From Magallana gigas (Eukaryota), in contig NC_088856.1 of assembly GCF_963853765.1 (NCBI RefSeq), positions 1,054,001 through 1,118,000 of the forward strand: a DNA stretch of 64,000 nucleotides, given 5' to 3'. Positions 1 to 64,000 of the stretch are shown here, piece after piece. The notes beneath the pieces are model-generated. The model searched no databases, was not told the DNA's origin, and saw nothing but the letters and a program-made list of their open reading frames with translations. The translations under genes and the position numbers were made by a program. Each line of letters starts with the position of its first letter. The first letter of the stretch is position 1.

Positions 1-34
1 ATTATTATGTATGGATGTTGTGCGAGAAAGTTTT

Positions 35-35
<1 letters not shown>

Positions 36-88
<53 letters not shown>
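36..88. repeat. (TC)n microsatellite in intron 3 of copy C0
   Basis: Direct TC run; same intronic position as the TC runs in B1, C1 and B2. Confidence 0.95.
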
Positions 89-92
<4 letters not shown>

Positions 93-169
93 CTTTTCAT
101 CAGTACAATATTCCATTATATGGATATCAAAAACTATAGAATTTTTCAATTTTGATGTTCCCTTAATAG

Positions 170-1478
170 TTCCACAAACTGCTGGTCCGTGACCTATCAA
201 CCAAGAAATACCTTCGGTTCCGGATCTGCGACACTAGTGGAGTAAAAGAAGGGGCGACTATTATAAACGAGGACATTGGTTTTATCTTGGACGGACACCT
301 TCCAAATCAATACAAGGTAAGTGAGAGTCTTGTTGTTGTAAAATCTAAACAGAAACTAAAACATTTAGGAATTAAAACTAAAAACATAATAGTGAGTACG
401 AGAACTTAATACTTTGGCTTTCTACGAGACAAAATATATCATATTCAAAATGAGAACGAAATCTGTTATATACAAAAAGTAATCTAAATTATTACACAGT
501 AGGCGAAAAGAAAAACTGGGTTCTCTACATAAAACATCCGAAAAGCATCATTTAATTATGACAAGGTATCTGTTACTGAAAAACTGGAAATCTCATCACA
601 CTGTAAAGAAGAAGTTAGCTTTCTCATGGCAATCTCACGTGTCATGATATTTTATTTTAAATGAAGACCATATGGATATGTGAAAGCACGTCTTTTATAA
701 TTTTTAGTATTGGGTCCTATGCTTTTAAGTATACGAGAAAATTAACTAATTGTGTTTATAAAACTTATCTCATTCATCATGCAAAAGTATCATTTCTAAA
801 TACATATAAAGTGATCTTTAAAACTGGAACCTTTGTAGTTTGAACTCGATTCGGGAGCGTCAACAAAAACTCCTGGCTTTGTCAAGGAACCAACTGTGAA
901 GGAAAAAATACACGTGGTCGTTTTCATCATTGACGGAAGTAACGTGAGCTTTCTGTCAAAAGACGTCGTAAAAAAGCTTAAAGAAATCAAAAGTCTTGTT
1001 ATTGAAAGAGGTATGAATTGACTCGAAATTTATAACTAAGTTATATAAAAAGAATACAGTTTATAATAATTAAAGATGAACATATATATACCATATTAAT
1101 TTGCATAAATGAGATCTAATTATGTGTTCTATTTCATCTAATGCTCAAAAACTGTAAACTTCTTTTTTAGGGATACCCCATTTAGTTTTCCTTACAAAAA
1201 TCGACGAAATTTGTGAACTGGTCAGTGATGACGTCAGCAAAGTATACAAAAGTAAAACTGTAAGGGATGCTGTCAACAGGGCCGCGGACCTCTTCGCTAT
1301 CCCTAGATCCAATGTACTTCCAGTAAAAAATTATGAGAAGGAACATGAACTTCAGACCAGTATCAACATACTGGCCCTTTTGGCCTTGCGAAAGTCACTG
1401 ATGTTTGCAGACGACTTTCTGGAGAATCAGTGTGAGCTGAAACAAGAAAATATGGAGGCTTTAAATAAACAAGACTGA
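170..1478 (+). CDS. IFI44L: IFI44-like gene copy C0, 3' part only (coding exons 4-6)
   Basis: Exons 170-316 (147 nt, FHKLLVRD...ICDTSG...HLPNQYK), 839-1010 (172 nt, FELDSGASTKTPGFVKEP...), 1171-1478 (308 nt, GIPHLVFLTKID...PVKNYEKE...ALNKQD*). All AG/GT sites and phases match the full copies downstream. The 5' exons lie upstream of the window. Confidence 0.9.
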
Positions 1479-2100: not shown

Positions 2101-3050
2101 CTACCTTTGGTGTAATATTTCATGAACAACTGAATTTCCAAAACAACGCCGATACTTTATCAAAAGCTGGTGGACGCGCTCTCGGAGGGATGGTTTCCAA
2201 AATTCGTCCATATAAAGAAATAGGAATTTCAACTTTTGAAAAATTGTTTTTAAAATTGTGTAGCGCCAGTTTGGATTATTGTAGTGAAGTGTGGGGCCTC
2301 CAGAATTATCATTCTATCGAAATGGAACAGAATCGAGCCCTCCGTTTTTACTTAGGCGTTCACAAATTAACACCTTTACCAGCGCTACACCGGGGATTTG
2401 GATTGGAACTCTGTTATGATAGACACTGTATTTACGCCGTGCGATTATGGATTCGATTGCTGACAATGGATGACAATCGGCTAACAAAGCGTGTTTTGTT
2501 GTGGGACTTTAATCAACCTGGTTTATGTAGATTGACATTACGCATTAAATCACTGTTCGAATCCACGAATCTTTTACATATTTATGATAATTTATCAGTC
2601 TGTGATGTTAATGAATTTGAAAACAAACTGTTTCTTACTTATGAAAATGAATCGTTGGGAAAGATAAACCAATTACCAAAATTGCAATTGTATAAAAGCA
2701 TTAAAACAAATTTTAAAACTGAAAAGTACCTTGAAATGAACATTTCAAAATCTCAAAGATCTATTTTGGCACAATTCAGGTGTGGGATACTCCAAATAAG
2801 AACTGAAAACGGGGCGATATAAGGGGGAACCTCTCGATGAAAGAATATGTAATTTTTGTGTATCAAATGAAATAAAAGACGAGAATCATTTTCTGTTTAA
2901 TTGTGAAATGTATTCTGATTTTAGAAGGGAATTATTCAATAATGTAGGATATAATCCAACACTAGTAATGTCAAATTAAGACTGTATCTTTTCTCTACTG
3001 TCAAATGTTCCGAGACAAACCTCTAAATATTTACTTGAATCTTGCTTTAA
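2101..3050 (+). mobile_element. Non-LTR retrotransposon (LINE, CR1/L2-like) ORF2 C-terminal fragment, degenerate
   Basis: ORF 2190-2822 plus flanks read (Y)LGVIFHEQLNF...ALGG...LDYCSEVWG...QNRALRFYLGV...RLW.RLL.MDDNRLTKRV...KLQLYKSIK..F.TEKYL...QRSILAQFRCG...*GEPLDERICNFC...DENHFLFNC. This is the typical post-RT region with a Cys/His motif. It is absent from the paralogous spacers at ~25.4 kb and ~59.4 kb. Ends approximate. Confidence 0.8.
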
Positions 3051-5008: not shown

Positions 5009-6996
5009 ATGGCGGAGCTACTTGCACGTAAAGACAAGAAACAAATATCACAGTGGATTGGCAGGGACAGTCAGTTTGAGCTCCTATACAAAATAAGCCG
5101 TGACGGGATGTCTTATCAGAGGTTCCATGAGTTATGTGACAACAAAGGACCCACTGTGACAATCTTTTACAACACAGACAACAACGTGTACGGAGGGTAC
5201 CTGTCAGACAACTGGGGGAGTACTCGGAGCTGGTGTACAGACCAGAAAGCGTTCTTGTTCAAATTACATTCTGCTGGTAACTGGAAACCAGTGATGTTTC
5301 CTTATACAAGTGGAGAAACTCATTATAAAGCAGGCAATCACGGGCCATGGTTTCATTCGTTGGCTTCATGCTCAAATAATGTTTTGAAAAAAACAGTGGG
5401 CGGTTTCTATCAACTTTTTTCTGAATATGATTTCTTTGACGGCCAAAGCTTTGATATGAAAGGAGAGACCGCCCAGTCCGTGGCAAACGGTCACAATAAC
5501 GTCACCGATCTGGAGGTCTACCTGGTCAAAGGTAATCGTTATTACTAGATAGTCAAAGGTCAGTTTATATTCATGTAAGTAAATTCATGGACGTCATCAT
5601 CATGAAAACGTTAGAAAAAGTGTATCAGGTTTGTAAATGAAGATAATTTGTCAATTCACATGCATTAATTCGTATTGCAATGACTTCAATAGTTGAGGTA
5701 GCATGTAAATATACGTCTCATTTGCTAAAGTAGTTGTTGGGTTCTGTTATCAGTATCTCAGAGCAAAAATATATGTGTAAATTTACTGCAGAAATGAAAT
5801 GTGTGTACAATATACACGAGAGCTTGTAATAAATTGCCACTGTTGTTGATGGATTGCCAGATGATGAACTTGAATCTCCATGGAGGGACTCACAAGACTG
5901 GAGTTCACAGGTATGTCATTGAAAAAACACACCTAACATTCACTAGTAACACTTCATTAACTTTTACTCGAACATTTCAAATAAAACTTACAACAACCAC
6001 TCATTTCCAGTTAATAAGATCATTGTCTGCGTTATTTCGCCGTTTAAACTTCAGATTAATTGTTGCAGTACTGTTCTGTAATTAATTATCTTAAACTACA
6101 TATTTTCACAACATATAACAAGATATAGTACTATTATATTGCAATCTCGATGGCGCTTTGCATATCAAAAATAAAGAAATATCAGTAGGTTATAATCTGA
6201 TTATTTTAATTATCCGAAGAAATACAACTGACATATATTTTGTTTCTTGTGTACATGTACAATTTTTCAGACTTTTCAAGAATTAAAAGAATTTGTTGCA
6301 AATTACGATCCCCTCGAGGAGATGAAGATTCCTGAGGTCAACATCCTACTGATAGGACAGGTCGGAGCCGGAAAGTCTAGCTTCCTCAACACCATCAACT
6401 CAATCTTCAGGGGCGGTATATCCTCCCGCGCATGCACAGGAAGTGCCGAGAATAGCCTCACTAAACGTGTGAGTCGAAGATTCTGATACAATTAAAATAA
6501 ACTTTATGTCAAAGATTCAATGCTTAAAGATATTTTGAATGTTCAAATCTTCAAATCAACTCTTTATCAGTTTGAAAAATTCCGTGTTCGTGACCCTTCG
6601 ACCAAGAAATACCTCTGTTTTCGGATTTGTGACACAAGGGGGGTTGAGGAGGGACTGTCCATCAAAAGTGAAGACCTGGGCTTTATTCTGGACGGAAATC
6701 TCCCAAATCATTACACGGTATTGTTGTGTAATTTCTCAGCTGATAAATAATCAATGTGTCTTTATATGGATAGTTTTTTTTATAAAGATGATACATGTAA
6801 TAGCAAAAGGTTGATAAAGAAAGCCCAAATGGTACAGTCAAGCCACAATCATTCACAACTTTGACATCAGCTACATGTAGCTTGACAGTGAAAAATGGGC
6901 ATTGAAAATTTTTCAAATAAAACGAATCACTTTTTGCACAGATACGGAGGTTTGACAGATTCTATTATTACTTATTAGGTTAGTTACTGACTCACT

Positions 6997-7033
<37 letters not shown>

Positions 7034-8682
7034 GAGGCGAAGCCGAGCCTTCTATGAGATTGATCAACTCAATATATTTCGGTAGTGAGTCAGTAACTAA
7101 CCTAATAAGTGTTTTGTTTTCTCGAGGACTATCAAGCGACATATATATTCACAAATAGCGATGTTCTACGCAAAGCCATGTACAAGATGCCTTACATCCC
7201 GTCCAATTTAACTCATTTTAAACCTTCAAAATTTTCAATCTCACCTTTCAAATACTCTTTCAAAATCTTTGCTTCACCCATGTTTACTTACAATGTTTTG
7301 TTGCTATTCAAGTTTAAATGTTTTCTCCCTTTCCTCTGCAGAGATTTGAGCAAATTTCGACGCTGCCATTTTGTTCTGCTCCAGACAAAACAATGTGACG
7401 TCAATATTCTAAGGGCAACTACTCTAATTTTAAAGAATTTCAAAGGTCAACTACTCCAAATACTTTAAGAACTTACGGCATGCAGTTTATGTATAAAATA
7501 CTATGAAATGTCGAAATGAGTAAGCGAAGCGTCGACCAATGACGGCCATATTGCCTAATATTATTTCTCACAGAACAAATATAGAGATATATGAGGCAAT
7601 CACGTGCTATGTTTAAACCAATGAAAATGTCACATTTCAGTTCAAGGGAAAACAAAAGATGATTGTAATCTTTCATATCTCTAATGCTGCTGTACATGAT
7701 AAACAACAAAACATAATGTACCTTTTAAGTAAAATACAGTTCCACAATACAAGTAACAGAGGTGAATCAATCTGCTTTCAGTTTAACCCTGTAGAGAAAG
7801 CATCAACAAAAACTCCAGGCTTTGTCAAAGAGCCCACGGTAAAGGACAGGATACACGTGGTAGTGTTTGTACTTGATGGAAGTACCCTGGATGTTCTTTC
7901 TGAGGGGGTCGTCTCAAAACTCAAGGATATCAAAAGTCTGGTAGTGGATAGGGGTAAGTTACTTCTCTCTGTGGGGTTCGTTACAAAACTCATGGAGATT
8001 AAAAGTTTCGTGGTAGATAGGGGTAAGTAACTTCTGTCTGGGTTGTGGGGGGGGGGCATAACAGAACTCAAGGATATCAAAAGTCTCGTGGTAGATATAG
8101 AAAATAACTTTTCTCTGAGAGCCTTAACGAAAAGATATTGTTAAAAGACTTAAAACGAAATACAAAAATCAATTTTTGTGTTAAATGTCTCTTGGTGGAC
8201 AGGTATGGTTTTGTAAGTGTGATTTACTTCAGTCTCCTGGTGATTTGAGGTGAGTAACGTCTGTCAAAAATTAAGAAGGGGTTAGTCAATACCAAAAATG
8301 TTTGTGACACAGGAGAAACTTCAAAGATTGAAGTTTGTACAAGTGTAAACTTCTGCCTTCTTTTTTGTTTCTAGGTGTATCCCAGTTGGCTTTTCTAACA
8401 AAGATGGACAAGATTTGTGAAACAGTAAACAAAGACGTCAGCAAAATGTTCACGAGCAGTGTCGTAGAAGATACCGTCAATAAAGCTGCTGATATTATCG
8501 CTATCCCAAGATCACATGTACTTCCGGTCAAAAATTATGAGAAGGAATCTCAACTGAAGACGGATATAAACATCCTTGCCCTGACAGCTCTACGACAGGC
8601 GCTCATGTTTGCAGACGACTTTCTGGAAAACCAGTATGAACTGGAACAAGAAAACTCGCAGACGTTAAACACGCGGGACTGA
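5009..8682 (+). CDS. IFI44L: IFI44-like protein copy A1 (TLDc + P-loop GTPase-like), intact, ~465 aa
   Basis: Exons 5009-5531, 5861-5910, 6271-6468, 6571-6717, 7782-7953, 8375-8682 (1398 nt, open). TLDc motifs LLYKISRDG/FHELCDNKGPTVT/YGGY/AFLF/DLEVY; Walker A GQVGAGKSS; DTRG; TKMD. Confidence 0.92.
6964..7655. mobile_element. Intronic insertion with a 141-nt terminal hairpin (6970-7110)
   Basis: Absent in the paralog A2 (gacagattctat|aagatgattgtaatc at ~28665). About 60-bp near-perfect inverted arms around ggcgaggcgaagccgagcc. Confidence 0.7.
7886..8120 (+). repeat. ~69-nt tandem repeat made of the end of exon 5 plus its splice donor (about 3 units), copy A1
   Basis: Unit ...ggggtcgtctcaaaactcaaggatatcaaaagtctggtagtggataggggtaagt recurs, with donors after 7953 and 8022. 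Also seen in A2, A3 and, more decayed, in B1 and B2. Confidence 0.85.
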
Positions 8683-12631: not shown

Positions 12632-14072
12632 ATGGAAAGATCACTAACACGTCGAGACAAGAAACAAATATCACAATGGATTGGCAATGATAGTCAGTTT
12701 GAGCTTCTGTACAAAATTAGCCGAGATGGGGGTTCAGCAGAGACGTTCCATGAGTTGTGTGACAACAAGGGACCTACTGTGACCATGTTCTACAACACGG
12801 ACAACAATGTGTACGGGGGGTACCTGTCAGACAGCTGGGAGAGTACCGGAAACTGGTGTACAGACCAGAGAGCGTTTCTGTTCAAATTATATTCTGCTGG
12901 CAACTGGAAACCTGTTAAGTTCCCATACGTAATAAAAGAAACCCATTTTAAAAATAAAACTCACGGACCATGGTTTTATTCGTTGACTTCAATGTATTCG
13001 TTTATAAAAACGACTAATAAACCATCGTCAAACTATTACAATTTAGACACTTCGAGTCTTTTTGACGGACACAGATTTGACATGAAAGGAGAAACCGTCC
13101 AGTCTGTGGCAAACGGTCACAACAATGTCACGGATCTGGAGGTCTACCAGGTCAAAGGTAAGAAATTTTCCCCACATACAATCATCGTTGTGCTTGAAAG
13201 CAATCATCTCACCTTTATTCTGAATTTTTTCTCATTAGGACTTTTTTCAGAAACAAAGATTTTTTTGTCTTTTTTCGAACCAAACCAAAGTTCAAATTAA
13301 TAACTTACATGTAATCATAATGTATCCCAATTAGTACTTATTTCTGTTTTGTTTTTGTTGTCATTTGATAAGTGTTGCGGGACGCGTGCAACAAAATGCT
13401 CATATTCTATTCTAGAAGGTTCTTTAGACGAAGAACTAGACTCTTTTTGGAGGGATTCACCAGAATGGAGTCCACAGGTTTGTGTCATTACAAAAAACAC
13501 TGACAATGATGCAATCTATATATTTATTATCTTTACACCAGAATAGTAACTGAATATGCACTGCCAAAATGACAAAACAATATCCTAACTATTTGATTGA
13601 AATCAAAAGTGCAATTGAGCAACAAAAATACAACAGTTTTCCAGAAAAAGAAAAAGTAAGCTATATGATAAAACATATTACTTAGAGCAACGATTTCTAT
13701 CTTAAATACAATTGTTATTATCAAGCATAAACATAAAAGTCACACTAAAGAATATTTCAACGTACAATATATAACCATATCAAATAGGTATGCTTGTATT
13801 TTGCGCCTATATCAGTCAGCATGTCAGCTAATACATATCACTGTTGTTTTGATTTATCTTCAATCATTCAGACTTTTCCAGAATTAAAAGAATTTGTTGC
13901 AAACTACAAACCTTTTGAGGAAACAAAAATCACAGAGGTCAACATTCTACTCATTGGTCCGGCTGGTGCAGGAAAATCTAGCTTTTTAAATACCATTAAC
14001 ACAATTTTTAAGGGCGAAATGTCATCCCGTACATGCACTGGATGCGCAGATATTAGTCCAGCACAAAAGGTT

Positions 14073-14142
<70 letters not shown>

Positions 14143-16472
14143 AACATTATATTCGAGAATATATAATAGAACACAGTTCAAAATGATTTTTATGAATTCT
14201 CAATAATGACTTAAATAGTTTCGCAAATTCCGGGTTCGTGACCCAACTACAAAAAAGCACCTTTGTTTCCGGATCTGCGACACTCGGGGCGTGGAGGAGG
14301 GTGTCTTCATTAAAAGTGAAGACTTGGGTTTTCTTATTGACGGAAACCTCTCAGACAATTACACTGTAAGTACAGATATGGGCATTTATTATATACCCAT
14401 CAATTTTCCTTTTTTGATATTGTCAATTATATAGAGAGTAAACTGATTTTACAGTTCACCACTTTTTTTTTTTAAATTATATTTAAAACTTTTGAAAAGA
14501 CAGGGTATATAATAAATTTATCATTATAACAGTAACTTGATCCAAAGAGCCGGATTACGTCTCGTTGCCAGGCGCGGATCATCGGATCAAATTCGCTTCG
14601 CGTCTCGTTTCATCTAAAGACCTGGCAGCTCGACGTGATCTGACCCTTTCGATCAAGTCACTGTTATAATAATATATATGTCTTATACAAAAACTACCGG
14701 TTTGAAAAGATTGTTTAGGTACTGAGATTTTTCAAACCATCTTGTTTTCTGCAATCCTGTCTTGTTTATGGTTCCAAAACTTTGCCTTTTTTACTATTTC
14801 AAACTAATTTATACTTTTCAATATAAAGAAAGGCCTAGGAAAATATATACTTTAAGTTTCAACTCGATTCGGAAGCTTCAACAAAAAGAATTGGCTTCGT
14901 GGAAGAACCAACAGTGAAAGAGAAAATGCACGTGGTTGTGTTTGTACTTGATGGAAGTACCCTTGACGTCCTGTCAGCGGGGGTCGTCTCAAAACTTAGA
15001 GAAATCAAAAGTCTCGTGGTAGACAAAAGTAGGTAATTTGTGTTGGACAGGATAGTTATTGAATCTTTAGAGATAAAAGACATCGTCGTAGGGATGAGTA
15101 ACTTGTGTCTGAAGGGTTCTTTTCAAACTTCAAGGAGATAAAATGTCTTATGGTTGATAGCAGTAAGAAATGTTTAACCAAATCAAAATATTTAGTATCA
15201 AATTACAAAATAAAATTCATATCTAGTAAAAGTAAAAATATTTGTGGATTATTAAGAAACGCATAAAATAAATATACAGTTAACCTGCTGTAAGAAAAAA
15301 AAAGATAAAAAGTATACGAAGCGTAATCAAAAAGTGTGTACATTAATTCAATACTTATCCGTAAAAGGATTGATTCGTTTTGATAAAACAATTGTTCGAA
15401 CCACGTAAAATCGAAATACACTCTGTATTTGTAGTTAAGCTCTAAGTATCGTTTTAGCGCTATGTTTGCTATGTTGAAAACCTGATCCAAAGTTTGGCAG
15501 TATAATGAGCTGCATTAAAAAATACTTTGTGACGAAAACGACAGATTTTTCATTTGTATTAGTTTAGCACTTTGATGACTCAATAGAAAAAGAAATGGAA
15601 ATTGTCCATCAAATATTATCGAATGGGCTATCCCATTATCAAACTGCCGATCACGCTTTCGAGCCGACTACTTGTTTATAGAAGAAGTTTGTGAAACGAC
15701 GTGATAAATATTTCAAACTGGGGAATTTATAGTCCGGACCGGAATGAAGAGAAATTGGAAATAATATGCATTTGTTTATATGGATTTGAAATAAATTTTA
15801 CAACTTGAAGAAAGTTTTATAACTTATATAGCTTTAAAAAAAACAGGCATGTCTTTCAATTGAATATGGCATACCGGGTATATAGCTTAAGAATTGAAAA
15901 AAATTATCACGATATCTTCAAATAAAAGGTCAGGGGTCTCGACGATGGATGATTTTCAGAGAATTTTCAATATGAATGTTACATTTTATAGTGTATTTAT
16001 AGTTTATTTTCATAACTTAATGCAGGTAAACTATAATTTTATAACAAAAAGTATGTAGTGCAAATATGTTTAAGCGATAATGTATTTCCCTGTTATTATA
16101 AATATATCAATTAAACACATGCCTGTTAGTGCATACTAGTATATGGATGAAACATTCGAATCTCATGTTTTATAACTATTTCCAGGTATACCCCATTTAG
16201 TTTTCCTAACCAAGATAGACAAACTTTGTAATTTGGTGGAGAAAGACGTCAGCAAAACGTTTAAGAGTAGAGATGTAGAAGACGCCGTCAACAATGCCGC
16301 TGATGTCATGGCTCTCCCAAGATCCCAAATACTCCCGGTTAAAAATTATGAAAAGGAAACTACTCTCAATACGGATATAAACATTCTTGCTTTGACGGCT
16401 CTCCGAAAGTTGTTGGTGTTTGCAGATGACTTTCTGGAGAACCAGTATGATTGGCAACAGATTGATATGTAA
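12632..16472 (+). CDS. IFI44L: IFI44-like protein copy B1, open, C-terminus shortened by 7 aa
   Basis: Exons 12632-13157, 13416(or 13428)-13477, 13872-14069, 14219-14365, 14857-15028 (AAG acceptor), 16186-16472. Walker A GPAGAGKSS, DTRG, TKID. TAA at 16470 where B2 has CAG. Confidence 0.85.
14075..14137. repeat. (TC)n microsatellite just after the exon 3 donor of B1
   Basis: Direct sequence. Confidence 0.95.
14523..14670. mobile_element. Palindromic (hairpin) insertion in intron 4 of B1
   Basis: Imperfect inverted arms attataacagtaacttgatc...ttgccagg / cctggcag...gatcaagtcactgttataat; centre contains gcttcgc. Not present in the B2 intron. Confidence 0.6.
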
Positions 16473-17976
16473 ATATTAAACAAAAAAACTGAGACTTTCA
16501 AAACATTGGTCTGATCCTAAATTATGGGATTGTATAGTTTGAAATAGTATTGTACATTTAATCTCATTTCTATTTGCAAATAGATGTAGCCAGTTTAAAG
16601 ATAAAACCTAAGATTGTGAATATATGAATTTGAAATCCAATCAGGTGTAGATGGTCACATAGTATTGAATAAATAAGTACTAAAAGGTTTTCAATTGTTT
16701 TAATACAACTATTTTCAAACACATTGCATATAGGCAAAAAACCAATGCCACAAAATGATTACAACGATTTAAAATTTACTTTAAGCAGATAAAGCGTTCT
16801 TTTTTTTGACTGGTAATATGTCCCGATTGCAGTCTTTATTTTTTTATTTTAGATTTTATCAAGTGCGCATGACAGTCTATTACTTTTTTTGATAATAAGA
16901 ATAGTGATGATAAATTCTATTCTATGTTAATTCAGTCAATAAACCCCTGAAACAATTGAACATTTACTTATGATTAAACATTTTATTATGGTTTATGAAA
17001 AAAGAGAATTTCTGAAGAAAAAAAAAAGAAAGCTTTTATTTTTACATATTTTTTTTTACCCTTATATAATGATTTTCTAAAAATCAGAAATTTTTCAAAT
17101 TTGTAAAAAAAAAAACAAAAACAAAAAACAAAAAAACCCAGAAAACTTAGTATTTTTATCAACAAGTCTACAATGTCTAGTGACCTTTTTCACAATAATA
17201 CTGAATGCACATGTATTATTTCAACAAAATGTAAAATAAATCCTTAACTACATAATCAGGACTCTTATATCAATTTATTTTCATTAAGTCAAATCAATTA
17301 TATATGACTTTGAGAATCATAGTAACATAACTTTTTAAGTACCATTGTATCTAAACGCCTAATGCGTAAAAAAATCCGTTAAACTTTTTCTTTCAAATTA
17401 TGATTGAAACCGGCTACCTTACTTATGTTTAATTAAATAGATCAAGTTGGATCAATACAAAGGTAGCAATATTTGTTTTGGTAGGTAGTTGGTGTAAATA
17501 TTTTAGGGTAACTAAGGGTGTTGTAAAGTTTCATGTTTTTTAGTTTAAGTAAATTATTGATTGGCTCTCAATCAACTAACTATTTTTTTTTACCTATTTG
17601 TACTTTTACAAGTTGATTCTCTTTAAAACAGCAATTACCAGTTCCGGGATATGAATCAATTTATACGCATTTATGAAAATTAGGTGTTACATATTCAACA
17701 GGCATACGGTCAGGAAAACCGCTTAATTAGAATAAACTCAATATTTTCCTTTTATTTCCTTTTATTTAATATACATGAATCTCTTTATATAGCTTCGATA
17801 TCAAATACAATGATATAGTCTTCAAATTACCATGACTTTCAATCTCTCATTAGAAACTCATTAGAAACTCATTAGAAACTAAAAAAAACATACGATGTCT
17901 ATAATAATTCCCATTATTTCAGATAGTGAAAAGGTTGTCTAAAAAATCGCGCATACCTTTCAAAAATTTTGACAAT

Positions 17977-19991: not shown

Positions 19992-20129
19992 NNNNNNNNN
20001 NNNNNNNNNNNNNNNNNNNNNNNNNNNNNNNNNNNNNNNNNNNNNNNNNNNNNNNNNNNNNNNNNNNNNNNNNNNNNNNNNNNNNNNNNNNNNNNNNNNN
20101 NNNNNNNNNNNNNNNNNNNNNNNNNNNNN
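19992..20129. other. Assembly gap (138 N)
   Basis: Run of N. Confidence 1.
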
Positions 20130-20585: not shown

Positions 20586-22331
20586 ATGAACGGGTTCCTC
20601 GTGCATAAACACAAGAACAAGATATCAGAATGGATTGGTGGGGATAGTAGGTTTGAGCTCCTTTACAAATTAAGTCGAGACGGAGGGTCAACAAAAATGT
20701 TCCATGAGTTGTGTGATAACAAAGGACCCACAGTGACCATCTTCTACAACACAGACAACAACGTGCATGGAGGGTACCTGTCAGACAGCTGGGGAAGATC
20801 TGGTGGATGGTGTACAGATCAGAGAGCGTTTCTGTTTACATTGTATAGTGCTGGTCACTGGAAACCAATAAAATTTCCTCACATTGATGGAGAAACACAT
20901 TTCCAAACTTTTAATCGTGGACCTTGCTTTTATTCATTAAACAGTTTTCACATGTATGTTAAAATGGAAAAAAAAATTCCGTCAAACTTTTACAAATGCA
21001 TAACAACTGGTCTATTTGACGGGCAAAGATTTGACATGAAAGGAGAGACTGCCCAGTCTGTGGCAAACGATCACAACAACGTCACAGATATGGAGGTCTA
21101 CCTGGTGAAAGGTAATGTATTATCATCATATCATCAATATCTTTTTAAGACACTACGTCACAAGATGGCGATTTAAATGTTTTGTTAAACTGTTAATGTC
21201 GTCGAAGCTCAGTGGTTAAAGTAGTGTGCTTTGGAACCGCAGATCGTGAGTTGAAATCCCCCTGGAGCTTTTGCCTATGTTAACTGCATTATATTTTTTG
21301 AAAATGTAATTTTTCATCCAAAATTGCACATATTGTGGCCTTAAATCTAGGTCATTGAAAGCGTTTTTAAGAAATAAAAAATATATTTACAATCAAAGTT
21401 CTGTAAGAAACAATGTATAATCATGAGTGGATTTTTTCTCTCTGAGTATTCATTAGCTCTATACCTTGAAAATGTTCACATCTTTATGCAGAGATTTTCG
21501 TCTCAGGGAAGTATGTATAGTATTAAAAAGGTAACGCCCAAAAAATCTTCTTATTTGATGACTTTGTGCCTGAATTTTAGATGGTTTACCAGACGAGGAA
21601 CTACAGATTCCTTGGAGGGATTCTACAGAGTGGAATAATAAGGTGAGTTACACAACTTTGTGAGGTAACATATTTGCTACATCAGAATAAAATATTCGAT
21701 CGTTAGACTAGTTGTCCTTGAGCACCGATTTTAATAACATTAAGGAAAAGTTCTTCAAATACTTTTATATGTTATAAAGTACATTTATACCCTATCGGAT
21801 TGTTTGCAAAAAAAAATAAAATTTTGACCAAATTTTAAACAACAATGAGGTGCTTTAATTGATATATTAATAACGATATTTATTTTTATCTTGGCTTTTG
21901 AATTAAAGATTTTTGATGCAAGTTATATCATTTTTCCAAAAAGGTTAATCAAAATCCATAGTTTAAAGTAAACTGAGGAATGTATGTGGTAATAAGGAAG
22001 CTTACCATGGGGCTGATATCAATTATATAGTCTTAACATCGAATTAGCATATTTTTTAACAATATTTTCAAGTCAATTTGCATTTATCTTTAAACTAACA
22101 CAAATATGTGTCTTATGTTTGAGGGTTTTCAAGAATTAAAGGAATTTATCGCCACTTACGAACCGTTTGCTGAGATGAAAATTCCGGAAGTCAACATTTT
22201 ACTGATTGGACAGGCCGGCGCCGGAAAATCCAGTTTATTCAACACCTTCAACTCAATCTTCAAAGGTGGAATTTCCTCCCGTGCATGTTCCGGAAGTGCA
22301 GAAAAAGGCATCACACAAAAGGTGCTCTCTC

Positions 22332-22367
<36 letters not shown>

Positions 22368-23716
22368 AGCACCAACAATACTCATTTTGCACGATTACAT
22401 TGATATCTTAAGATATAGACTTTTTCTTTTCAATATTAATATTCCATTAATAGTTCGATAAATTACGGATCCGTGACCCATCCACCAAGAAATATCTTCG
22501 TTTCCGAATATGCGATACTTGTGGAGTAAAGGATCGGATAAACATCAAGAACGAGGATATTGGTTTTATTATGGATGGAAACCTCCCAAATCATTACACG
22601 GTAAATAAGAATTAAAATCAAAATCTAAGGAGAATCTAAGAAATTTTGAAAACAAAATACAGTGTACATAATTCTCTAGGAGTCAGCACATTTTAAATTT
22701 AAAATGAGAATGACGCCAGTTATTAAAAAAGTAACCGAAATCATTATATAGTAGATGATAATCTAGGATTTATACTTTAAACTTAAAAGAAGTATTAATC
22801 AAAATGACAAGGTATGTAAGGAAATAGGAACATCGTTAATCATCCCACTGTAAAAAAAAATATAGAACTTTTCGAGCAAATTTCAGAAGTCATTCTTACT
22901 GTAAATCATATAACTTTTGAAGCAAATTTCAGAAGTCATTCTGAAAATGATTGCACGATATGTGAAGTTCCGCCTTCTATTCTTATTGTTACTTATTCGC
23001 TATGCTTTTAAGTATATGACAATTAACTAAAATGTGTCTTATTCAGTTAACTCAATTTCTTCAGTTTGACCACGAGACTGGGGCGTCAATAAAAAGCCCT
23101 GGCTTTGTCAAGGAACCAACAATGAGGGATAAAATACACGTGGTCGTTTTCATTCTTGACGGGAGTAACCTGAACTTTCTTTCATACGACGTTGTTAAAA
23201 AACTTCAAGAGATCAAAAGTCTTGCTATTGATAGAGGTTTGAACTTTGAAAAGTCACTTAATAAAAAATGAAAGCAATATCTAAATTATTGCAATGAATT
23301 ATTCTCGTTTCTTTGGTGAATAAATATAAACGTGCATTAGTATATTCATTAACGAAGTGTTAGATTTTACTTTAGTAGCTAATACTCTGAAACAATAAAC
23401 TCTTATAGGTGTTTCTCCCTTAGTTTTTCTTACGAAGATCGACGAAATTTGTGAATTGGTCAGAGATGACGTCAGCAAAGTGTACAATAGTAAAATTGTA
23501 GAAGATGCTGTCAACAAGGCCGCGGATCTCTTCGCTATCCCAAGATTGCATGTACTTCCGGTCAAAAATTATGAGAAGGAATCTGAACTCCTGACCTGTA
23601 TCAACATTTTGGCTTTAACAGCGTTGCGAAAGTCGTTGATGTTTGCAGACGACTTTCTTGAGAACCAGTATGAGCTAAAACAAGAAAAAATGGAGACGTT
23701 AAATAAACAGGACTGA
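20586..23716 (+). CDS. IFI44L: IFI44-like protein copy C1, open, ~470 aa
   Basis: Exons 20586-21111, 21581-21642, 22124-22321 (GAG acceptor, weak GTGCTC donor), 22454-22600, 23065-23236, 23409-23716. Walker A GQAGAGKSS, DTCG, TKID. Confidence 0.85.
21198..21268 (+). mobile_element. tRNA-derived (SINE-head-like) degenerate sequence in intron 1 of C1
   Basis: A-box-like agctcagtgg and B-box-like gagttgaaatcc at tRNA spacing; no clean acceptor stem. Confidence 0.35.
22326..22366. repeat. (TC)n microsatellite just after the exon 3 donor of C1
   Basis: Direct sequence. Confidence 0.95.
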
Positions 23717-26700: not shown

Positions 26701-29699
26701 ATGGCGGGATTACTTACACGTAAAGACAAGAAACAAATATCACAATGGATTGGCAGGGACAGTCAGTTTAAGCTGCTATACAAAGTAAGCCGTGATGGGA
26801 TGTCCTACCAGAGGTTCCATGAGTTGTGTGACAACAAGGGACCTACTGTGACCATCTTCTACAACACAGACAACAACATGTACGGGGGGTACCTGTCTGA
26901 CAGCTGGGGGAGTACTGGGAGCTGGTGTACAGACTTAACTGCGTTTCTGTTCAAATTACATTCTGCTGGCAACTGGATACCAGTTATGTTTCCTTACACA
27001 CGTGGAGAAACTCATTTTAAAGCAGGCAATCATGGGCCATGGTTTCATTCTTTGGCTTCATGCTCAAATGATGTTTTAAAAAAAACAGAGGGCGGTTTCT
27101 ATCAACTTTTTTCTGAATATGATTTCTTTGACGGGCAAAGCTTTGACATGAAAGGAGAGACTGCCCAGTCTGTGGCAAACGGTCACAATAACGTCACAGA
27201 TTTAGAGGTCTACCTGGTCAAAGGTAATTGTTATTACTAGATAGTCAAAGGTCAGTATATATTCATGTCAGTATATTCATGGACGTCATCATCATGAAAA
27301 CGTTAGAAAAAGTGTATCAGGTTTGTGAATGAAGATAATTTGTCAATTCACATGCATTTATTCATATTGCAATGACTTCAATAGTTGAGGTAGCATGTAA
27401 ATATACTTATCATTTGCTAAAGTAGTTGTTGGGTTCTGTTATCAGTATCTCAGAACAAAAATATATGTGTACATTTACTGACGAAATGAAATGTGTGTAC
27501 AATATACATGAGAGCTTGTTATAAATTGCCACTGTTGTTAATGGATTGCCAGATGATGAACACGAATCTCCCTGGAGGGACTCACCAGACTGGAGTTCAC
27601 AGGTACGCCATTGACAAAACATATCTAATATGCACTAGTAACATTGCATTAACTTTTACTCGAACATTTCAAATGAAACTTACAACAACCACTCATTTCC
27701 AGTAAATAAGATTATTGTATGTGTGGTTTTGCCGTATAAAATTCAAATTAATTGTTGCGGTTCTGTTCTGTAATTAATAATCTTATACTACATATTTTCA
27801 CAACATATAACAAGATATAGTACTATTATATTGCAATCTCGATGGCGCTTTGCATATCAAAAATAATCAAAAAAATAAAGAAATATCAGTAGGTTATGAT
27901 CTGATTATTTTAATTATCCGATGAAATACTACTGACATGTATTTTGTTTCTTGTGTACATGTACAATTTTTCAGACTTTTCAAGAATTAAAAGAATTTGT
28001 TGCAAATTATGAGCCCCTCGAGGAGATGAAGATCAGTGAGGTCAACATTTTACTGATAGGACAGGTCGGAGCCGGGAAATCTAGCTTCCTAAACACCATC
28101 AACTCAATCTTCAAGGGCGGGATATCCTCCCGCGCTTGCACCGGAAGCGCCGAGAGCAGCCTCACTAAAAGTGTGAGTCGAGGATTCTGATACAATTTAA
28201 AATAAACTTTAAGTCAAACATTCAATGCTTAAAGATATTTTGAACGTTCAAATCTTCAAATCAACTCTTTATCAGTTTGAAAAATTCCGCGTCCGTGACC
28301 CTTCGACCAAGAAATACCTCCGTTTTTGGATTTGTGACACAAGGGGGGTTGAGGAGGGACTGTCCATCAAAAGTGATGACCTAGGCTTTATTCTGGACGG
28401 AAACCTCCCAAATCATTACACGGTATTGTTGTGTACTTTCTCAGCTGATAAATAATCAATGTGTCTGTATATGGATAGATTTTAAGATGATACATGTAAT
28501 AGCACAAGGGGGAGGTTGATAAAGAAAGCCCAAATGGTACAGTCAAGCCACAATCGTTCACAACTTTGACATCAGGTACATGTAGCTTGACAGTAAAAAA
28601 TGGGCACTGAAAATTTTTCAAGAAAACACGAATCACTTGCATCGATACGGAGGTTTGACAGATTCTATAAGATGATTGTAATCTTTCATATCTCTAATGC
28701 TGCTGTACATGTTAAACAACAAAACATAATGTATCTTTTAAGTAAAATACAGCCTCACAATACAAGTAACAGAGGTGTGTCAATCTGCTTTCAGTTTAAC
28801 CCTGTAGAGAAAGCATCAACAAAAACTCCAGGCTTTGTCAAAGAGCCCACGGTGAAGGACAGGATACACGTGGTAGTGTTTGTTCTTGACGGAAGTACCC
28901 TGGATGTTCTGTCTGAGGGGGTCGTCTCAAAACTCAAGGATATCAAAAATCTGGTAGTGGATAGGGGTAAGTAACTTCTCTCTCTGGGGGTCTTTACAAA
29001 GCTCATGGAGATGAAAAGTTTCGTGGTAGATAGGGGTAAGTAATTTCTGTCTGGGTTGCAGGGGGAGGGGGGTGTATTACAGAACTCAAGGATATCAAAA
29101 GTCTCCTGGTAGATATAGAAAATAACTTCTCTCTGAGGGCCTTAACGAAAAGAGATTGTTAAAAGACTTAAAACGAAATACAAAAATCAATTTTTGTGTT
29201 AAATGTCTCTTGGTGGACAGGTATGGTTTTGTAAGTGTGATTTGCTTCAGTCTCTGGTGATTTGAGGTGGGTAACGTCTGTCAAAAAATTAGAAGGGGCT
29301 AGTCAATATTAAAAATGTTTGTGACACAGGAGAAACTTCAAAGATTAAATTTTGTACAAGTGTAAAATTGTGCCATCTTTTTGGTTTCTAGGTGTACCCC
29401 AGTTGGCTTTTCTAACAAAGATGGACAAGATTTGTGAAACAGTGAACAAAGATGTCAGCAAAATGTTCACGAGCAGTGCCGTAGAAGATACCGTCAATAA
29501 AACCGCTGACATTATCGCTATCCCAAGATCCCATGTACTTCCGGTCAAAAATTATGAGAAGGAAACTCAACTGAAGACGGATATAAACATCCTTGCCCTG
29601 ACAGCTCTACGACAGGCGCTCATGTTTGCAGACGACTTTCTGGAAAACCAGTATGAACTGGAACAAGAAAACTCGCAGACGTTAAACACGCGGGACTGA
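26701..29699 (+). CDS. IFI44L: IFI44-like protein copy A2, intact, ~465 aa
   Basis: Exons 26701-27223, 27553-27602, 27975-28172, 28276-28422, 28795-28966, 29392-29699; near-identical to A1 including introns. Confidence 0.92.
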
Positions 29700-52039: not shown

Positions 52040-53205
52040 CAAATCAAATCGAGACGGAGGGTAAAACAAATTAAAATGTTTCTTGAGTTGGGTACCTGTC
52101 ACAAAGCTTGGAAACAGTGGGGTCTGGTTAACAAACAAATCGGATGAAATTCGGTGGCAGTTGTACGGATCATAGGACATTTCTCGTTGAATTGTAAACT
52201 CCTGGTCATTGGAAACCAATCCCTACATACTGTAGATGGAGAAACACATTCCAAAATCTTTATTAAGAGCCTTGGTTTTTTTCCTTGCAATTGGGGTCAT
52301 TTAACATATCCTTTCAAATGATTGAAAATTCTCGATCAAACTTTTACAAATTCAGTATAAATGAGCTCCTTGAGGGACAAACATTTGACATGAGAGGGTA
52401 GACCGCCCAATCCGTAGAAAACAGTCACAACAACGTTACTAACCCGGAGGTCTACCGAGTCATAGGTTAGAGTTTATTCATTATTATCATATTAACTTTT
52501 TCTCGTTTAAAACAAATGCCAACGATTTTGCAATACTCACCAGAATAGGAAAGTTACTGTTGTTGTAATTTTACTTTTTAAGAAGACAGGTTGATCAGCA
52601 ACATACCTTAAAATTAGATAACTAAATCTCTTCAGTTTGACATCGAGTCCGGGGCGTCAATAAAAAGCCCGGGCTTTGTTAAGAAACAAACAATGAGGGA
52701 TAAAATACACGTGGTCGTTTTCTTTCTTAACAAGGGTAGTCTGAACTTTCTGTCAAACCACGTTGTTAAAACACTTCAAGAGATCAAAAGTCTTACTGTA
52801 CGTTGATAGAGGTTTGAAATTGGAAAAGTCATTAAATACAAAATGTTCTCGTTTCTTTGGTGAATTAACCTAGACGTGCATTAGTATATTCATTAACGAA
52901 GTTTTAGATTTAGATTCCTTACCAAGAATGACGAAATTAATGAATTGGTCAGAGATGACGTCAGCAAAGTGTACATTAGTAAAACTGTAGAAGATGCTGT
53001 CAACAAGGCCGCGGGTCTCTTCGCTATCCAAAGATTCCATGTACTTCCGGTCAAAAATTATGAGAAGGAATCTGAACTCCTGACCAGTATCAACATTTTA
53101 GCTCTAATGACGTTGCGGAAGTCGTTGATGTTTGCAGACGACTTTCTTGAGAACCAGTATGAGCTTAAACAATAAAAGATGGAGACATTAAATAAACAGG
53201 ACTGA
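52040..53205 (+). pseudogene. IFI44L: IFI44-like copy C2, decayed, exons 2-4 deleted
   Basis: Scrambled TLDc exon ending at 52465 (...ttgacatgagagggtagaccgcccaatcc...gaggtctaccgagtcatag|gt). Exon 5 at 52636-52811 has a 4-nt insertion. Exon 6 lacks its acceptor and has a premature TAA at 53173; the original TGA is at 53203-05. Confidence 0.88.
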
Positions 53206-63178: not shown

Positions 63179-63701
63179 ATGGCGGAGCTACTTACACGTA
63201 AAGACAAGAAACAAATATCACAATGGATTGGCAGGGACAGTCAGTTTGAGCTCCTATACAAAGTAAGCCGTGACGGGTTGTCTTACCAGAGGTTCCACGA
63301 GTTGTGTGACAACAAGGGGCCCACTGTGACCATCTTTTACAACAAGGATAACAACGTGTACGGGGGGTACCTGTCAGACAGCTGGGGTAGTACTGAGGGC
63401 TGGTGTACAGACCAGAAAGCATTTCTATTCAAACTACATTCTGCTGGCAACTGGAAACCAGTGATGTTTCCTCATACAAGTGGACAAACTCATTTTAAAC
63501 AAAACGATCACGGACCATGGTTTCATTCGTTGCCTTCATTTTACTCAGGTTCTATTATGAATAAATCAGCAGACGGCTATTACGTGTTATATACTTCTTC
63601 CTTTTTTGACGGGCAAAATTTTGACAGGAAAGGAGAGACCGTCGATTCAGTGGCAAACAGTCACAATAACGTCAGAGATCTGGAGGTCTTCCTGGTCAAA
63701 G
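63179..63701 (+). CDS. IFI44L: IFI44-like copy A4, TLDc exon (gene continues beyond the window)
   Basis: 523-nt open exon from ATG to GTCAAAG|gtacat, same size as the other A-type first coding exons. Confidence 0.85.
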
Positions 63702-64000
63702 GTACATGTAATTAATATTGCTTTACTCAGCCATCATTTTTAATAGTACATGTATTTGATTATCAAAATGAACAAGAGACTCAAGAGTCTTCACGATCAG
63801 ATCAAAACAGAAGGTCAAATGTCGGAGTTCATTCATTGGCGTCGTCATCTTTAAAACGTTAGAAAAATTGATCAGATTTGATTACAAGATAAACATAATA
63901 CATTCAGTCATCACGCATGCATTTCATTTACTTATAACATCAAGGAATTGAAACCGTTAAAAACTAGTTGAAATAACGTATAATAATTAAGTATTTTGTA

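What the first reader, a model, noticed from the sequence alone, without database searches (positions are those of the whole stretch)
5330..5450. Hypervariable ~25-aa patch inside an otherwise conserved TLDc domain
Between GPWF.S and FDGQ.FDMKGE the copies read A1 LASCSNNVLKKTVGGFYQLFSEYDF, A4 LPSFYSGSIMNKSADGYYVLYTSSF, B1 LTSMYSFIKTTNKPSSNYYNLDTSSL, B2 LNSIYLIINTTGKPQSKFYNLNSYSL, C1 LNSFHMYVKMEKKIPSNFYKCITTGL. B1 and B2 differ at 12 of 24 residues here while the N-terminal ~90 residues are nearly identical. A variable surface patch on a domain fused to a conserved GTPase suggests a sensor-effector design with diversifying ligand recognition. I do not know this to be described for TLDc domains. 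Equivalent positions: ~12960-13070, 20915-21020, 27030-27135, 38450-38555, 47750-47860, 63510-63615.
Basis: partly seen in the sequence, partly recalled or inferred. Interest (0 to 1): 0.78.

Follow-up and report, generated by a model that had tools for sequence, protein, structure and literature searches.

The report
Fast-evolving loop in oyster IFI44-like genes
Seven tandem copies of an oyster antiviral-type gene (IFI44-like: a TLDc domain fused to a GTPase) share a genuine 25-27-residue hypervariable loop, but it changes at roughly the neutral rate, so relaxed constraint fits better than adaptive diversification.

Summary
The window is Magallana (Crassostrea) gigas and carries seven TLDc first exons of tandem "interferon-induced protein 44(-like)" genes. 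The 25-27 residues after GPWF.S are the most variable stretch of the ~465-aa protein (permutation P<5e-5).

TLDc plus GTPase is simply the known IFI44/IFI44L architecture: the best full-length fold match is human IFI44, E 1.5e-39.

Codon analysis:
- The excess is purely non-synonymous. Patch omega is 0.79 (CI 0.52-1.29) in seven close pairs and 0.90 by ML, against 0.13-0.19 for the rest.
- Synonymous divergence is not raised.
- Tests for omega>1 are borderline: p 0.02-0.04 for the 53-codon variable region, 0.06 gap-free, 0.11 patch alone. The control partition gives nothing.
- 83% of patch codons fit omega=1.

Other points:
- AlphaFold places the patch in a low-confidence hairpin tip after the conserved glycine bend.
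- The canonical TLDc residues stay invariant.
- The patch and its flanks have incongruent trees, so paralogs recombine.
- Contigs from four RNA or probable-RNA runs show the A2 gene spliced and no variants in its patch, so no hypermutation.

Best reading (about 0.55): a relaxed, exposed loop. Diversifying recognition (about 0.3) is not excluded.

The parts
5009..8682 (+). Gene A1, IFI44-like. TLDc exon about 5009-5531, 'pre' variable block 5285-5341, hypervariable patch 5360-5434, GTPase exons up to 8682.
   Evidence: ORF and translation; Pfam TLD; patch coordinates; exon hits by tblastn; splice donor AAAG|GT read.
12632..16490 (+). Gene B1. TLDc exon about 12632-13157, patch 12983-13060, P-loop exon about 13869-14069. 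The last exon shows one in-frame stop relative to B2.
20586..23716 (+). Gene C1, identical to protein P0169 ('interferon-induced protein 44 isoform X2'). TLDc exon about 20586-21111, patch 20937-21014.
26701..29699 (+). Gene A2, identical to protein P0160. Six exons: 26701-27223, about 27553-27602, about 27975-28172, 28276-28422, 28795-28966, 29392-29699. Patch 27052-27126.
   Evidence: Exact protein match. GT..AG joints in contigs of four runs from four studies, two recorded as RNA-Seq and two guessed to be RNA. Patch coordinates.
38121..44237 (+). A3 pseudogene. TLDc exon 38121-38648 with two adjacent in-frame TAA codons inside the patch (38472-38546). GTPase exons are recognisable up to 44234.
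47423..51061 (+). Gene B2, identical to protein P0165. TLDc exon about 47423-47948, patch 47774-47851.
63179..64000 (+). Gene A4, identical to protein P0156, cut by the end of the window. TLDc exon about 63179-63701, patch 63530-63604.
52090..53202 (+). Heavily degraded IFI44-like pseudogene fragment. TLDc and GTPase pieces are 40-47% identical to B2 and carry 10 stops.
1..1478 (+). 3' exons of the upstream paralogue U2. Its TLDc exon lies just before the window, in locus L009.

Best explanation
The patch is an exposed strand-loop-strand hairpin that follows the conserved glycine bend (GP.F) of the TLDc domain. It occurs in a young, tandemly duplicated Crassostrea/Magallana subclade of IFI44-like genes (N-terminal TLDc, C-terminal GTPase).

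In this subclade the canonical 'GP.FG.G.D' motif of the wider family has been lost. Most hairpin codons are free to change. Ordinary point substitutions and small in-frame indels accumulate there at about the neutral rate, while the rest of the protein is under strong purifying selection.

Recombination or gene conversion among the paralogues then shuffles patch types relative to their flanks.

Shown here:
- the family assignment
- the rates
- the absence of a mutational hot spot
- recombination between patch and flanks
- splicing of A2

Inferred: surface exposure, and the view that most of the variability has no selected function.
For: Family:
- Exact matches to M. gigas 'interferon-induced protein 44(-like)' proteins.
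- TLDc fold with Z 18 to mEAK7, NCOA7 and OXR2; GTPase domain with Z 15 to Toc33/34 and mitofusin.
- Full-length best matches to human IFI44 and IFI44L.

Rates:
- ML M0 omega is 0.90 in the patch (dS tree length 5.2, dN 4.7), 0.39 in the upstream block and 0.18 in the rest (dS 4.4, dN 0.8).
- Seven near-independent close pairs pooled: patch omega 0.79 (CI 0.52-1.29), rest 0.13 (CI 0.09-0.16). The N:S ratio in the patch equals the neutral expectation (binomial p 0.40). pS is 0.24 in the patch and 0.29 in the rest (p 0.30).
- The nearly-neutral model puts 83% of patch codons at omega=1. The M2a improvement is not significant for the patch alone (p 0.11), and the control partition gives an LRT of 0.
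- Site-by-site test: 1 positive and 4 negative of 25 patch sites, against 2 positive and 59 negative of 136 elsewhere.

Other:
- The sister clade in the same genome keeps the canonical motif and shows patch omega 0.43.
- Patch pLDDT is 73-89 and below 50 at the tip, in coil with short strands.
- AU tests reject each partition's tree on the other partition (p 1e-63 and 4e-46). Mosaic proteins exist.
- There are no variants in the A2 patch in four runs.
Against: - Site models on the 53-codon variable region favour a class of 17-21% of codons at omega 1.7-2.1. The p values are 0.044 (M1a vs M2a), 0.032 (M7 vs M8) and 0.018 (M8a vs M8). All candidate sites fall in the variable blocks.
- Patch length is held at 25-27 residues and about eight anchor positions are conserved, so the hairpin is not junk.
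- Positions aligned by HMM to the mEAK-7 V-ATPase contact residues H277 and Q317 (IFI44L positions 34 and 74) are also among the most variable (87th and 91st percentile). This hints that the variable sites share a partner-binding face.
- Power is low: 19 sequences, and saturated divergence between patch types.
Confidence: 0.55

Rival explanations
1. The hairpin, together with the upstream block and positions 34 and 74, is a partner-recognition surface of the TLDc domain under diversifying selection. Each paralogue would bind a different target, such as a viral protein or a V-ATPase stalk variant, and recombination would reassort patch types with GTPase types.
For: - Borderline support for omega>1 confined to the variable blocks, with zero signal in the control partition.
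- One close pair (A4 against its C. angulata relative) has 13 non-synonymous and 1 synonymous patch change.
- Variable positions 34 and 74 align to mEAK-7 residues that contact V-ATPase subunits B and A (PMC9263379). By collinearity of the structural alignment (model 1-177 to mEAK-7 242-415), the mEAK-7 subunit-E contacts Y367 and K384 fall in or beside the patch.
- The canonical TLDc residues stay invariant.
- In C. gigas the gene called IFI44 is reported to respond to OsHV-1 infection (PMC4198667).
- A2 is spliced in contigs of four runs.
Against: - Mean omega is at or below 1 in every estimate.
- The test loses significance without gap columns (p 0.06) and for the patch alone (p 0.11).
- The site-by-site test finds only one patch site, which is gap-adjacent.
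- Recombination, shown, is known to inflate such tests.
- The residue-level mapping to the V-ATPase interface is unverified for the C-terminal half.
- The papers read here report no V-ATPase-binding test for any IFI44 protein. The 2021 study tested five other TLDc proteins (PMC8608904).
Confidence: 0.32
2. The patch is an artefact or the product of a special mutational process. Candidates are misalignment, a compensated frameshift, a local mutation hot spot, import of foreign sequence by gene conversion, or programmed or somatic hypermutation.
For: - Indels occur in the patch.
- Pairwise Nei-Gojobori dS saturates between distant patch types.
- The histories of patch and flanks differ.
Against: - The nucleotide alignment shows only in-frame 3-nt indels and residual homology, with no frame shift.
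- Synonymous divergence in close pairs is not raised (0.24 against 0.29), and ML dS is 5.2 against 4.4.
- There are no variant letters in the A2 patch in contigs of four runs from four studies.
- Patch types are inherited stably between M. gigas and C. angulata.
Confidence: 0.05
3. The hairpin contacts the protein's own GTPase domain and co-evolves with it. The variability would then reflect paralogue-specific intramolecular tuning, not an external ligand.
For: The full-length model has high confidence (mean pLDDT 91.6) but only moderate pTM (0.67), so a defined but uncertain domain arrangement exists.
Against: - The GTPase domain is as conserved as the rest of the TLDc domain (entropy 0.54 against 0.56), so there is little to co-vary with.
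- Natural mosaics combine an A-type patch with partly B-type GTPase segments.
Confidence: 0.08

Closest known systems
Vertebrate IFI44 and IFI44L (interferon-induced protein 44 and 44-like)
   Same: Same two-domain architecture: N-terminal TLDc and C-terminal GTPase, about 450 aa. They are the best full-length structural matches (human IFI44 E 1.5e-39, 26% identity over residues 1-464). NCBI gives these oyster genes the same name.
   Different: The oyster genes form a roughly 1-Mb tandem cluster of at least 39 TLDc-encoding matches on one chromosome, against two genes in humans (own knowledge). The hypervariable hairpin is a feature of one oyster subclade. Induction and function of these particular paralogues were not tested.
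TLDc-domain V-ATPase regulators (mEAK-7, NCOA7, OXR1/Oxr1p, TLDC2, TBC1D24/Skywalker)
   Same: Same fold: Z 16-18, rmsd 1.9-2.4, 147-156 aligned residues. The conserved G.S, GG, glycine-bend and C-terminal Glu positions are invariant in the oyster copies (PMC8608904).
   Different: The TLDc domain is N-terminal and fused to a GTPase. The segment after the glycine bend has lost the glycine-rich motif and is hypervariable. No V-ATPase binding test for IFI44-type proteins appears in the papers read here (PMC8608904).
Rapidly evolving specificity loops of antiviral restriction factors (TRIM5alpha v1 loop, MxA/MxB loop L4); from my own knowledge, not tested here
   Same: A short, exposed, indel-prone loop concentrates nearly all amino-acid divergence in an otherwise conserved antiviral-type protein.
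   Different: Those loops show clear omega>1 and experimentally proven control of specificity. Here omega is about 0.8-0.9, tests are borderline, and no target is known.

Membership tests
IFI44/IFI44L family | N-terminal TLDc domain followed by a C-terminal P-loop GTPase domain in one protein of about 450 aa | tested here: met
   Pfam TLD plus MMR_HSR1 on a full-length relative. Model residues 1-177 match TLDc chains and 187-465 match GTPases. Window copies are identical to annotated 465-470-aa proteins.
IFI44/IFI44L family | Closest full-length relatives are IFI44 and IFI44L rather than other TLDc or GTPase proteins | tested here: met
   In AlphaFold-DB Swiss-Prot, human and chimpanzee IFI44, human IFI44L and mouse IFI44 and IFI44L reach E 1.5e-39 to 4e-33 over residues 1-448/464. 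The next hit is at 3e-14.
IFI44/IFI44L family | Intact GTPase motifs (G1 GxxxxGKS, G3 DxxG, G4 [NT]KxD) | tested here: met
   G220, G225, K226, S228, D278, G281, T372 and D375 are invariant and G223, A224, T279, R280 and K373 nearly invariant in 91 homologues. The motifs are visible in all window-encoded proteins.
IFI44/IFI44L family | Induction by interferon-like or antiviral signalling | not tested
   Literature reports that 'IFI44' responds to OsHV-1 in C. gigas (PMC4198667), but the paralogue is not identified. Here only splicing of A2 in contigs of RNA or probable-RNA runs was seen.
TLDc domain (PF07534) | Significant match to the Pfam model | tested here: met
   63.5 and 59.8 bits against a cut-off of 24.5. 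The match covers only about the N-terminal 100 residues in these copies. It is full-length in relatives.
TLDc domain (PF07534) | TLDc beta-sandwich fold | tested here: met
   Z 17-18.4, rmsd 1.9-2.4, 147-156 residues aligned to NCOA7, mEAK7, OXR2, Skywalker and Oxr1p. The B2 domain model has pLDDT 92.9 and pTM 0.90.
TLDc domain (PF07534) | Conserved residues equivalent to Ncoa7 G815, S817, G845, G896 and E938 | tested here: met
   G33, S35, G62/G63, G112 and E169 are invariant in 16 subclade proteins. Equivalence of G33, S35 and G62-63 rests on the HMM alignment to mEAK-7. Equivalence of G112 and E169 rests on motif position only (PMC8608904).
TLDc domain (PF07534) | Binding to V-ATPase | not testable with these tools
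IFI44 was not among the TLDc proteins tested in PMC8608904.
Positively selected specificity loop (TRIM5alpha v1 or Mx L4 type) | Sites with dN/dS significantly above 1 concentrated in the loop | tested here: inconclusive
   Variable region p 0.018-0.044, gap-free p 0.06, patch alone p 0.11. Mean omega is 0.79-0.90.
Positively selected specificity loop (TRIM5alpha v1 or Mx L4 type) | Loop is solvent-exposed | tested here: inconclusive
   Coil with short strands and locally low pLDDT.
Programmed or somatic hypermutation cassette | Many variants of the patch at one locus within or between individuals | tested here: not met
   No variant letters at 27052-27126 in contigs of four runs from four studies, and two variant sites elsewhere in the exon. 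Contigs can hide rare variants.

The most novel reading that the evidence does not exclude
The hairpin, the upstream block and positions 34 and 74 together form a hypervariable face on the same side of the TLDc domain that mEAK-7 uses to grip the V-ATPase stator. In oysters, tandem IFI44-like paralogues would diversify this face, and recombination would reassort it, to recognise different viral or host targets. That would be an invertebrate counterpart of the specificity loops of vertebrate restriction factors, and the first functional handle on the unexplained TLDc domain of IFI44 proteins.
Probability: 0.3. Interest if true: 0.7.

Novelty: new member of a known kind. Interest (0 to 1): 0.4.

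Why it matters
The papers read here give no function for the TLDc domain of IFI44 or IFI44L. Oysters carry dozens of copies (at least 39 TLDc matches in this genome) and lack adaptive immunity (PMC7064767).

If the hypervariable hairpin were a recognition surface, it would show where the TLDc domain of IFI44 proteins meets its partner. It would also give a natural panel of variants for binding and antiviral assays against OsHV-1, a major aquaculture pathogen.

As the evidence stands, the patch is better read as a loosely constrained surface loop. The practical value is therefore modest:
- a precise map of constrained and free positions in this domain
- a warning that striking paralogue variability here does not by itself mean adaptive diversification

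Tried and rejected
1. Compensated frameshift as the source of the unrelated A1/A2 patch. Rejected: the nucleotide alignment shows two in-frame 3-nt indels only.

2. Mutation hot spot or misalignment. Rejected: synonymous divergence is not raised in close pairs or by ML.

3. Pairwise Nei-Gojobori estimates between distant patch types. They were saturated and uninformative, so I replaced them with ML and with close pairs.

4. Residue-level mapping of the patch onto solved TLDc structures by sequence. This failed. Profile alignments to mEAK-7, Skywalker, OXR2 and NCOA7 stop at residue 87-91 even at E up to 10. Only the ranges of the structural alignment are available. The link between the patch and the mEAK-7 subunit-E contacts is therefore by collinearity only.

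5. Solvent accessibility and TLDc-GTPase contacts. These could not be computed because model coordinates are not returned.

6. Site models on the whole exon with a single tree (second block). Discounted, because the patch and flanks have incongruent trees.

7. Allelic hypervariability of the patch. Not seen in four runs, but only contigs were available, not raw reads.

8. Literature searches for a described hypervariable TLDc patch or an IFI44 expansion study in bivalves. Nothing specific was found. The library is partial, so this is weak evidence of novelty.

My codon models are my own implementation. Branch lengths are fixed to the IQ-TREE estimates up to a scale factor, so this is not codeml or HyPhy.

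Full report
WHAT IS THERE

The window is a eukaryotic, intron-bearing stretch (GC about 33%) of chromosome-scale contig C4 of a 564-Mb assembly. Four window-encoded proteins are identical to Magallana (Crassostrea) gigas proteins that NCBI names "interferon-induced protein 44" or "44-like". These are A2 = P0160, A4 = P0156, B2 = P0165 and C1 = P0169.

Seven first exons on the + strand each encode a complete TLDc domain of 174-176 codons. Pfam PF07534 scores 63.5 bits against a cut-off of 24.5. Each is followed by exons of a P-loop GTPase.

- One copy, A3, is a pseudogene with two adjacent in-frame TAA codons inside the patch.
- A further degraded fragment lies at 52090-53202.
- The genome holds at least 39 TLDc matches of this type. 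Nearly all lie between 0.2 and 1.12 Mb of the same contig.

Exact patch coordinates are A1 5360-5434, B1 12983-13060, C1 20937-21014, A2 27052-27126, A3 38472-38546, B2 47774-47851 and A4 63530-63604.

- B1 and B2 differ at 12 of 26 patch positions, against 7 of the first 90 residues.
- Among the six intact window copies, the most variable 26-column window begins exactly at the first patch column. Its mean entropy is 1.33 bits against 0.56 overall, and permutation P is below 5e-5.
- In 21 close full-length relatives, the eight most variable 26-residue windows of the entire 465-aa protein all start at residues 115-122.
- A second variable block (residues 93-111) lies just upstream, separated by the invariant GP.F island.
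- Of the 35 most variable TLDc positions, 29 fall between residues 100 and 141.

FAMILY

A full-length AlphaFold model of A2 has mean pLDDT 91.6.

- Residues 1-177 align with solved TLDc domains: mEAK-7, NCOA7, OXR2, Skywalker and Oxr1p, at Z 16-18.4, rmsd 1.9-2.4 and 147-156 aligned residues.
- Residues 187-465 align with Toc33/34, mitofusin and EngB-type GTPases at Z about 14-15.7.
- Against Swiss-Prot models, the best full-length matches are human and chimpanzee IFI44, human IFI44L, and mouse IFI44 and IFI44L (E 1.5e-39 to 4e-33). The next hit is at 3e-14.
- GTPase G1, G3 and G4 residues are invariant or nearly so in 91 homologues.

The "domain fused to a conserved GTPase" is therefore the standard IFI44/IFI44L architecture, not a new design.

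IS IT SELECTION, RELAXATION OR MUTATION?

I built a codon alignment of 19 intact sequences of the subclade. It has nine from this genome, six from the Crassostrea angulata cluster and four spliced mRNA-length contigs from public runs.

Maximum-likelihood one-ratio fits:

| Partition | omega | dS tree length | dN tree length |
|---|---|---|---|
| Patch | 0.90 | 5.2 | 4.7 |
| Upstream block | 0.39 | 6.2-6.5 | 2.4-2.5 |
| Rest of the exon | 0.18 | 4.4 | 0.8 |

Seven nearly independent, unsaturated close pairs pooled:

| Partition | omega (95% CI) | pS |
|---|---|---|
| Patch | 0.79 (0.52-1.29) | 0.24 |
| Upstream block | 0.62 (0.34-1.23) | 0.19 |
| Rest | 0.13 (0.09-0.16) | 0.29 |

- The N:S ratio in the patch equals the neutral expectation (binomial p 0.40).
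- Synonymous divergence is not raised (patch against rest, p 0.30).

The extra variability is therefore wholly a six-fold loosening at non-synonymous sites. It is not a hot spot or an alignment artefact.

Site models on the 53-codon variable region, using its own tree, favour a class of 17-21% of codons at omega 1.7-2.1.

| Test | p |
|---|---|
| M1a vs M2a, variable region | 0.044 |
| M7 vs M8, variable region | 0.032 |
| M8a vs M8, variable region | 0.018 |
| M1a vs M2a, gap columns removed | 0.06 |
| M1a vs M2a, patch alone | 0.11 |
| M1a vs M2a, conserved partition as control | LRT 0.0 |

For the patch alone, the nearly-neutral model places 83% of codons at omega=1. A site-by-site test finds 1 positive and 4 negative of 25 patch sites, against 2 positive and 59 negative of 136 elsewhere.

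These are my own implementations, with branch lengths fixed up to a scale factor. Recombination is demonstrably present (next section), and it is known to inflate such tests. I read this as weak, unconfirmed evidence for a few positively selected sites on a background of near-neutral change.

RECOMBINATION

Trees from the variable region and from the rest of the exon are strongly incongruent. AU tests reject each on the other's data (p 1e-63 and 4e-46).

- A1, A2 and two C. angulata genes share one patch type with 100% support, but are not a clade on the flanks.
- The C. angulata proteins P0163 and P0164 are mosaics of A-like and B-like segments.
- Between A1 and A2 the patch is less diverged at synonymous sites (dS 0.07) than the rest (0.47). 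This fits a recent exchange.

CLADE SPECIFICITY

A sister clade of 12 genes in the same genome keeps the canonical GP.FG.G.D motif, has no indels there, and shows patch omega 0.43 against 0.22 elsewhere.

The ratio of patch entropy to other-TLDc entropy is 3.2 in the window's subclade, 1.75 in a related oyster subclade and 1.3 in the canonical bivalve family. The region is generally the fastest part of the domain. The extreme contrast comes with loss of the glycine-rich motif in this subclade.

STRUCTURE

- In the A2 model the patch is coil with short bridges, at pLDDT 82-89.
- In a TLDc-only model of B2 (pLDDT 92.9, pTM 0.90) the patch blocks drop to 73-78, and residues 130-132 fall below 50. 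Short strands flank them at 122-128 and 135-137.
- This is the signature of a flexible hairpin tip. I could not compute accessibility because coordinates are not returned.
- The canonical TLDc residues (G33, S35, G62/63, G112-P113, E169) are invariant in all 16 subclade proteins. They correspond to residues whose mutation weakens or abolishes V-ATPase binding in Ncoa7 (PMC8608904).

A LEAD, NOT A RESULT

- By HMM alignment, the mEAK-7 residues G276/H277 and P316/Q317 correspond to IFI44L positions 33/34 and 73/74. Those mEAK-7 residues contact V-ATPase subunits B and A (PMC9263379).
- Positions 34 and 74 are at the 87th and 91st percentile of variability.
- By collinearity of the structural alignment (1-177 to 242-415), the subunit-E and subunit-A contacts Y341, T354, Y367 and K384 would fall near residues 98, 111, 124 and 141. 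That is in or next to the two variable blocks.
- This could mean that the variable face is the ancestral partner-binding face. It fits either diversification of binding, or decay of an interface that is no longer used.

EXPRESSION AND ALLELES

Contigs from four runs of four studies join the six exons of A2 at GT..AG boundaries. Two of the runs are recorded as RNA-Seq and two are only guessed to be RNA. They show two variant sites in exon 1 and none in the patch.

The hypervariability is therefore between paralogues. It is not allelic or somatic hypermutation, with the caveat that contigs hide rare variants. In C. gigas, "IFI44" is a known OsHV-1-responsive marker (PMC4198667), but the paralogue is not specified.

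VERDICT

The architecture is the known IFI44 one, and the evolutionary signature is near-neutral, not demonstrably adaptive.

My probabilities:
- relaxed exposed loop, 0.55
- diversifying recognition surface, about 0.32
- intramolecular co-evolution with the GTPase domain, 0.08
- artefact or special mutational process, 0.05

An earlier first-reader note on another piece of this genome (s1-369137) states the same idea. It is not independent evidence.

Noticed in passing
window 38472-38546 (A3): The only two stop codons in the A3 TLDc exon are adjacent TAA TAA. They replace the conserved Tyr-Tyr anchor of the patch (TAT TAC in A4). The remaining A3 exons still align without stops, so the pseudogene looks recent. 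Its last intron is about 3 kb longer than in the other copies.
   Followed up: partly
window 14075-14138 and 48959-49015: Perfect (CT)32 and (TC)28.5 microsatellites start a few bases after the splice donor of the P-loop exon in B1 and B2. The C1 ORF read-through shows the same repeat. It appears as SLSLSL in the ORF translations.
   Followed up: partly
window 16188-16487 (B1 last exon): The last exon of B1 shows one in-frame stop when aligned to B2. B1 may be truncated or a pseudogene despite its intact TLDc exon.
   Followed up: no
window 2190-2822: A 210-aa ORF with no Pfam match at E up to 0.01 lies between two IFI44-like genes. It is possibly a decayed mobile-element fragment.
   Followed up: no
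window 7659-8030 (A1): The ORF covering A1 exon 5 runs on into a second, diverged copy of the ...KLKDIKSLVVDRGK motif. This suggests a small local duplication at the exon-intron boundary.
   Followed up: no
window 19992-20129: A run of 138 N (assembly gap or masked) lies just upstream of gene C1. It was left untouched.
   Followed up: no
L031, L032 and L034 (C. angulata CM046783.1, 783-902 kb); proteins P0163 and P0164: The C. angulata cluster carries genes that combine an A1/A2-type patch with partly B-type GTPase segments. Gene content and order differ from the M. gigas window, which indicates rapid turnover of the array.
   Followed up: partly
protein P0001 (1833 aa) and similar hits: Some proteins in the public library contain up to seven or eight tandem TLDc domains related to this one (Pfam TLD 499 bits in 7 stretches). 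Their origin was not examined.
   Followed up: no
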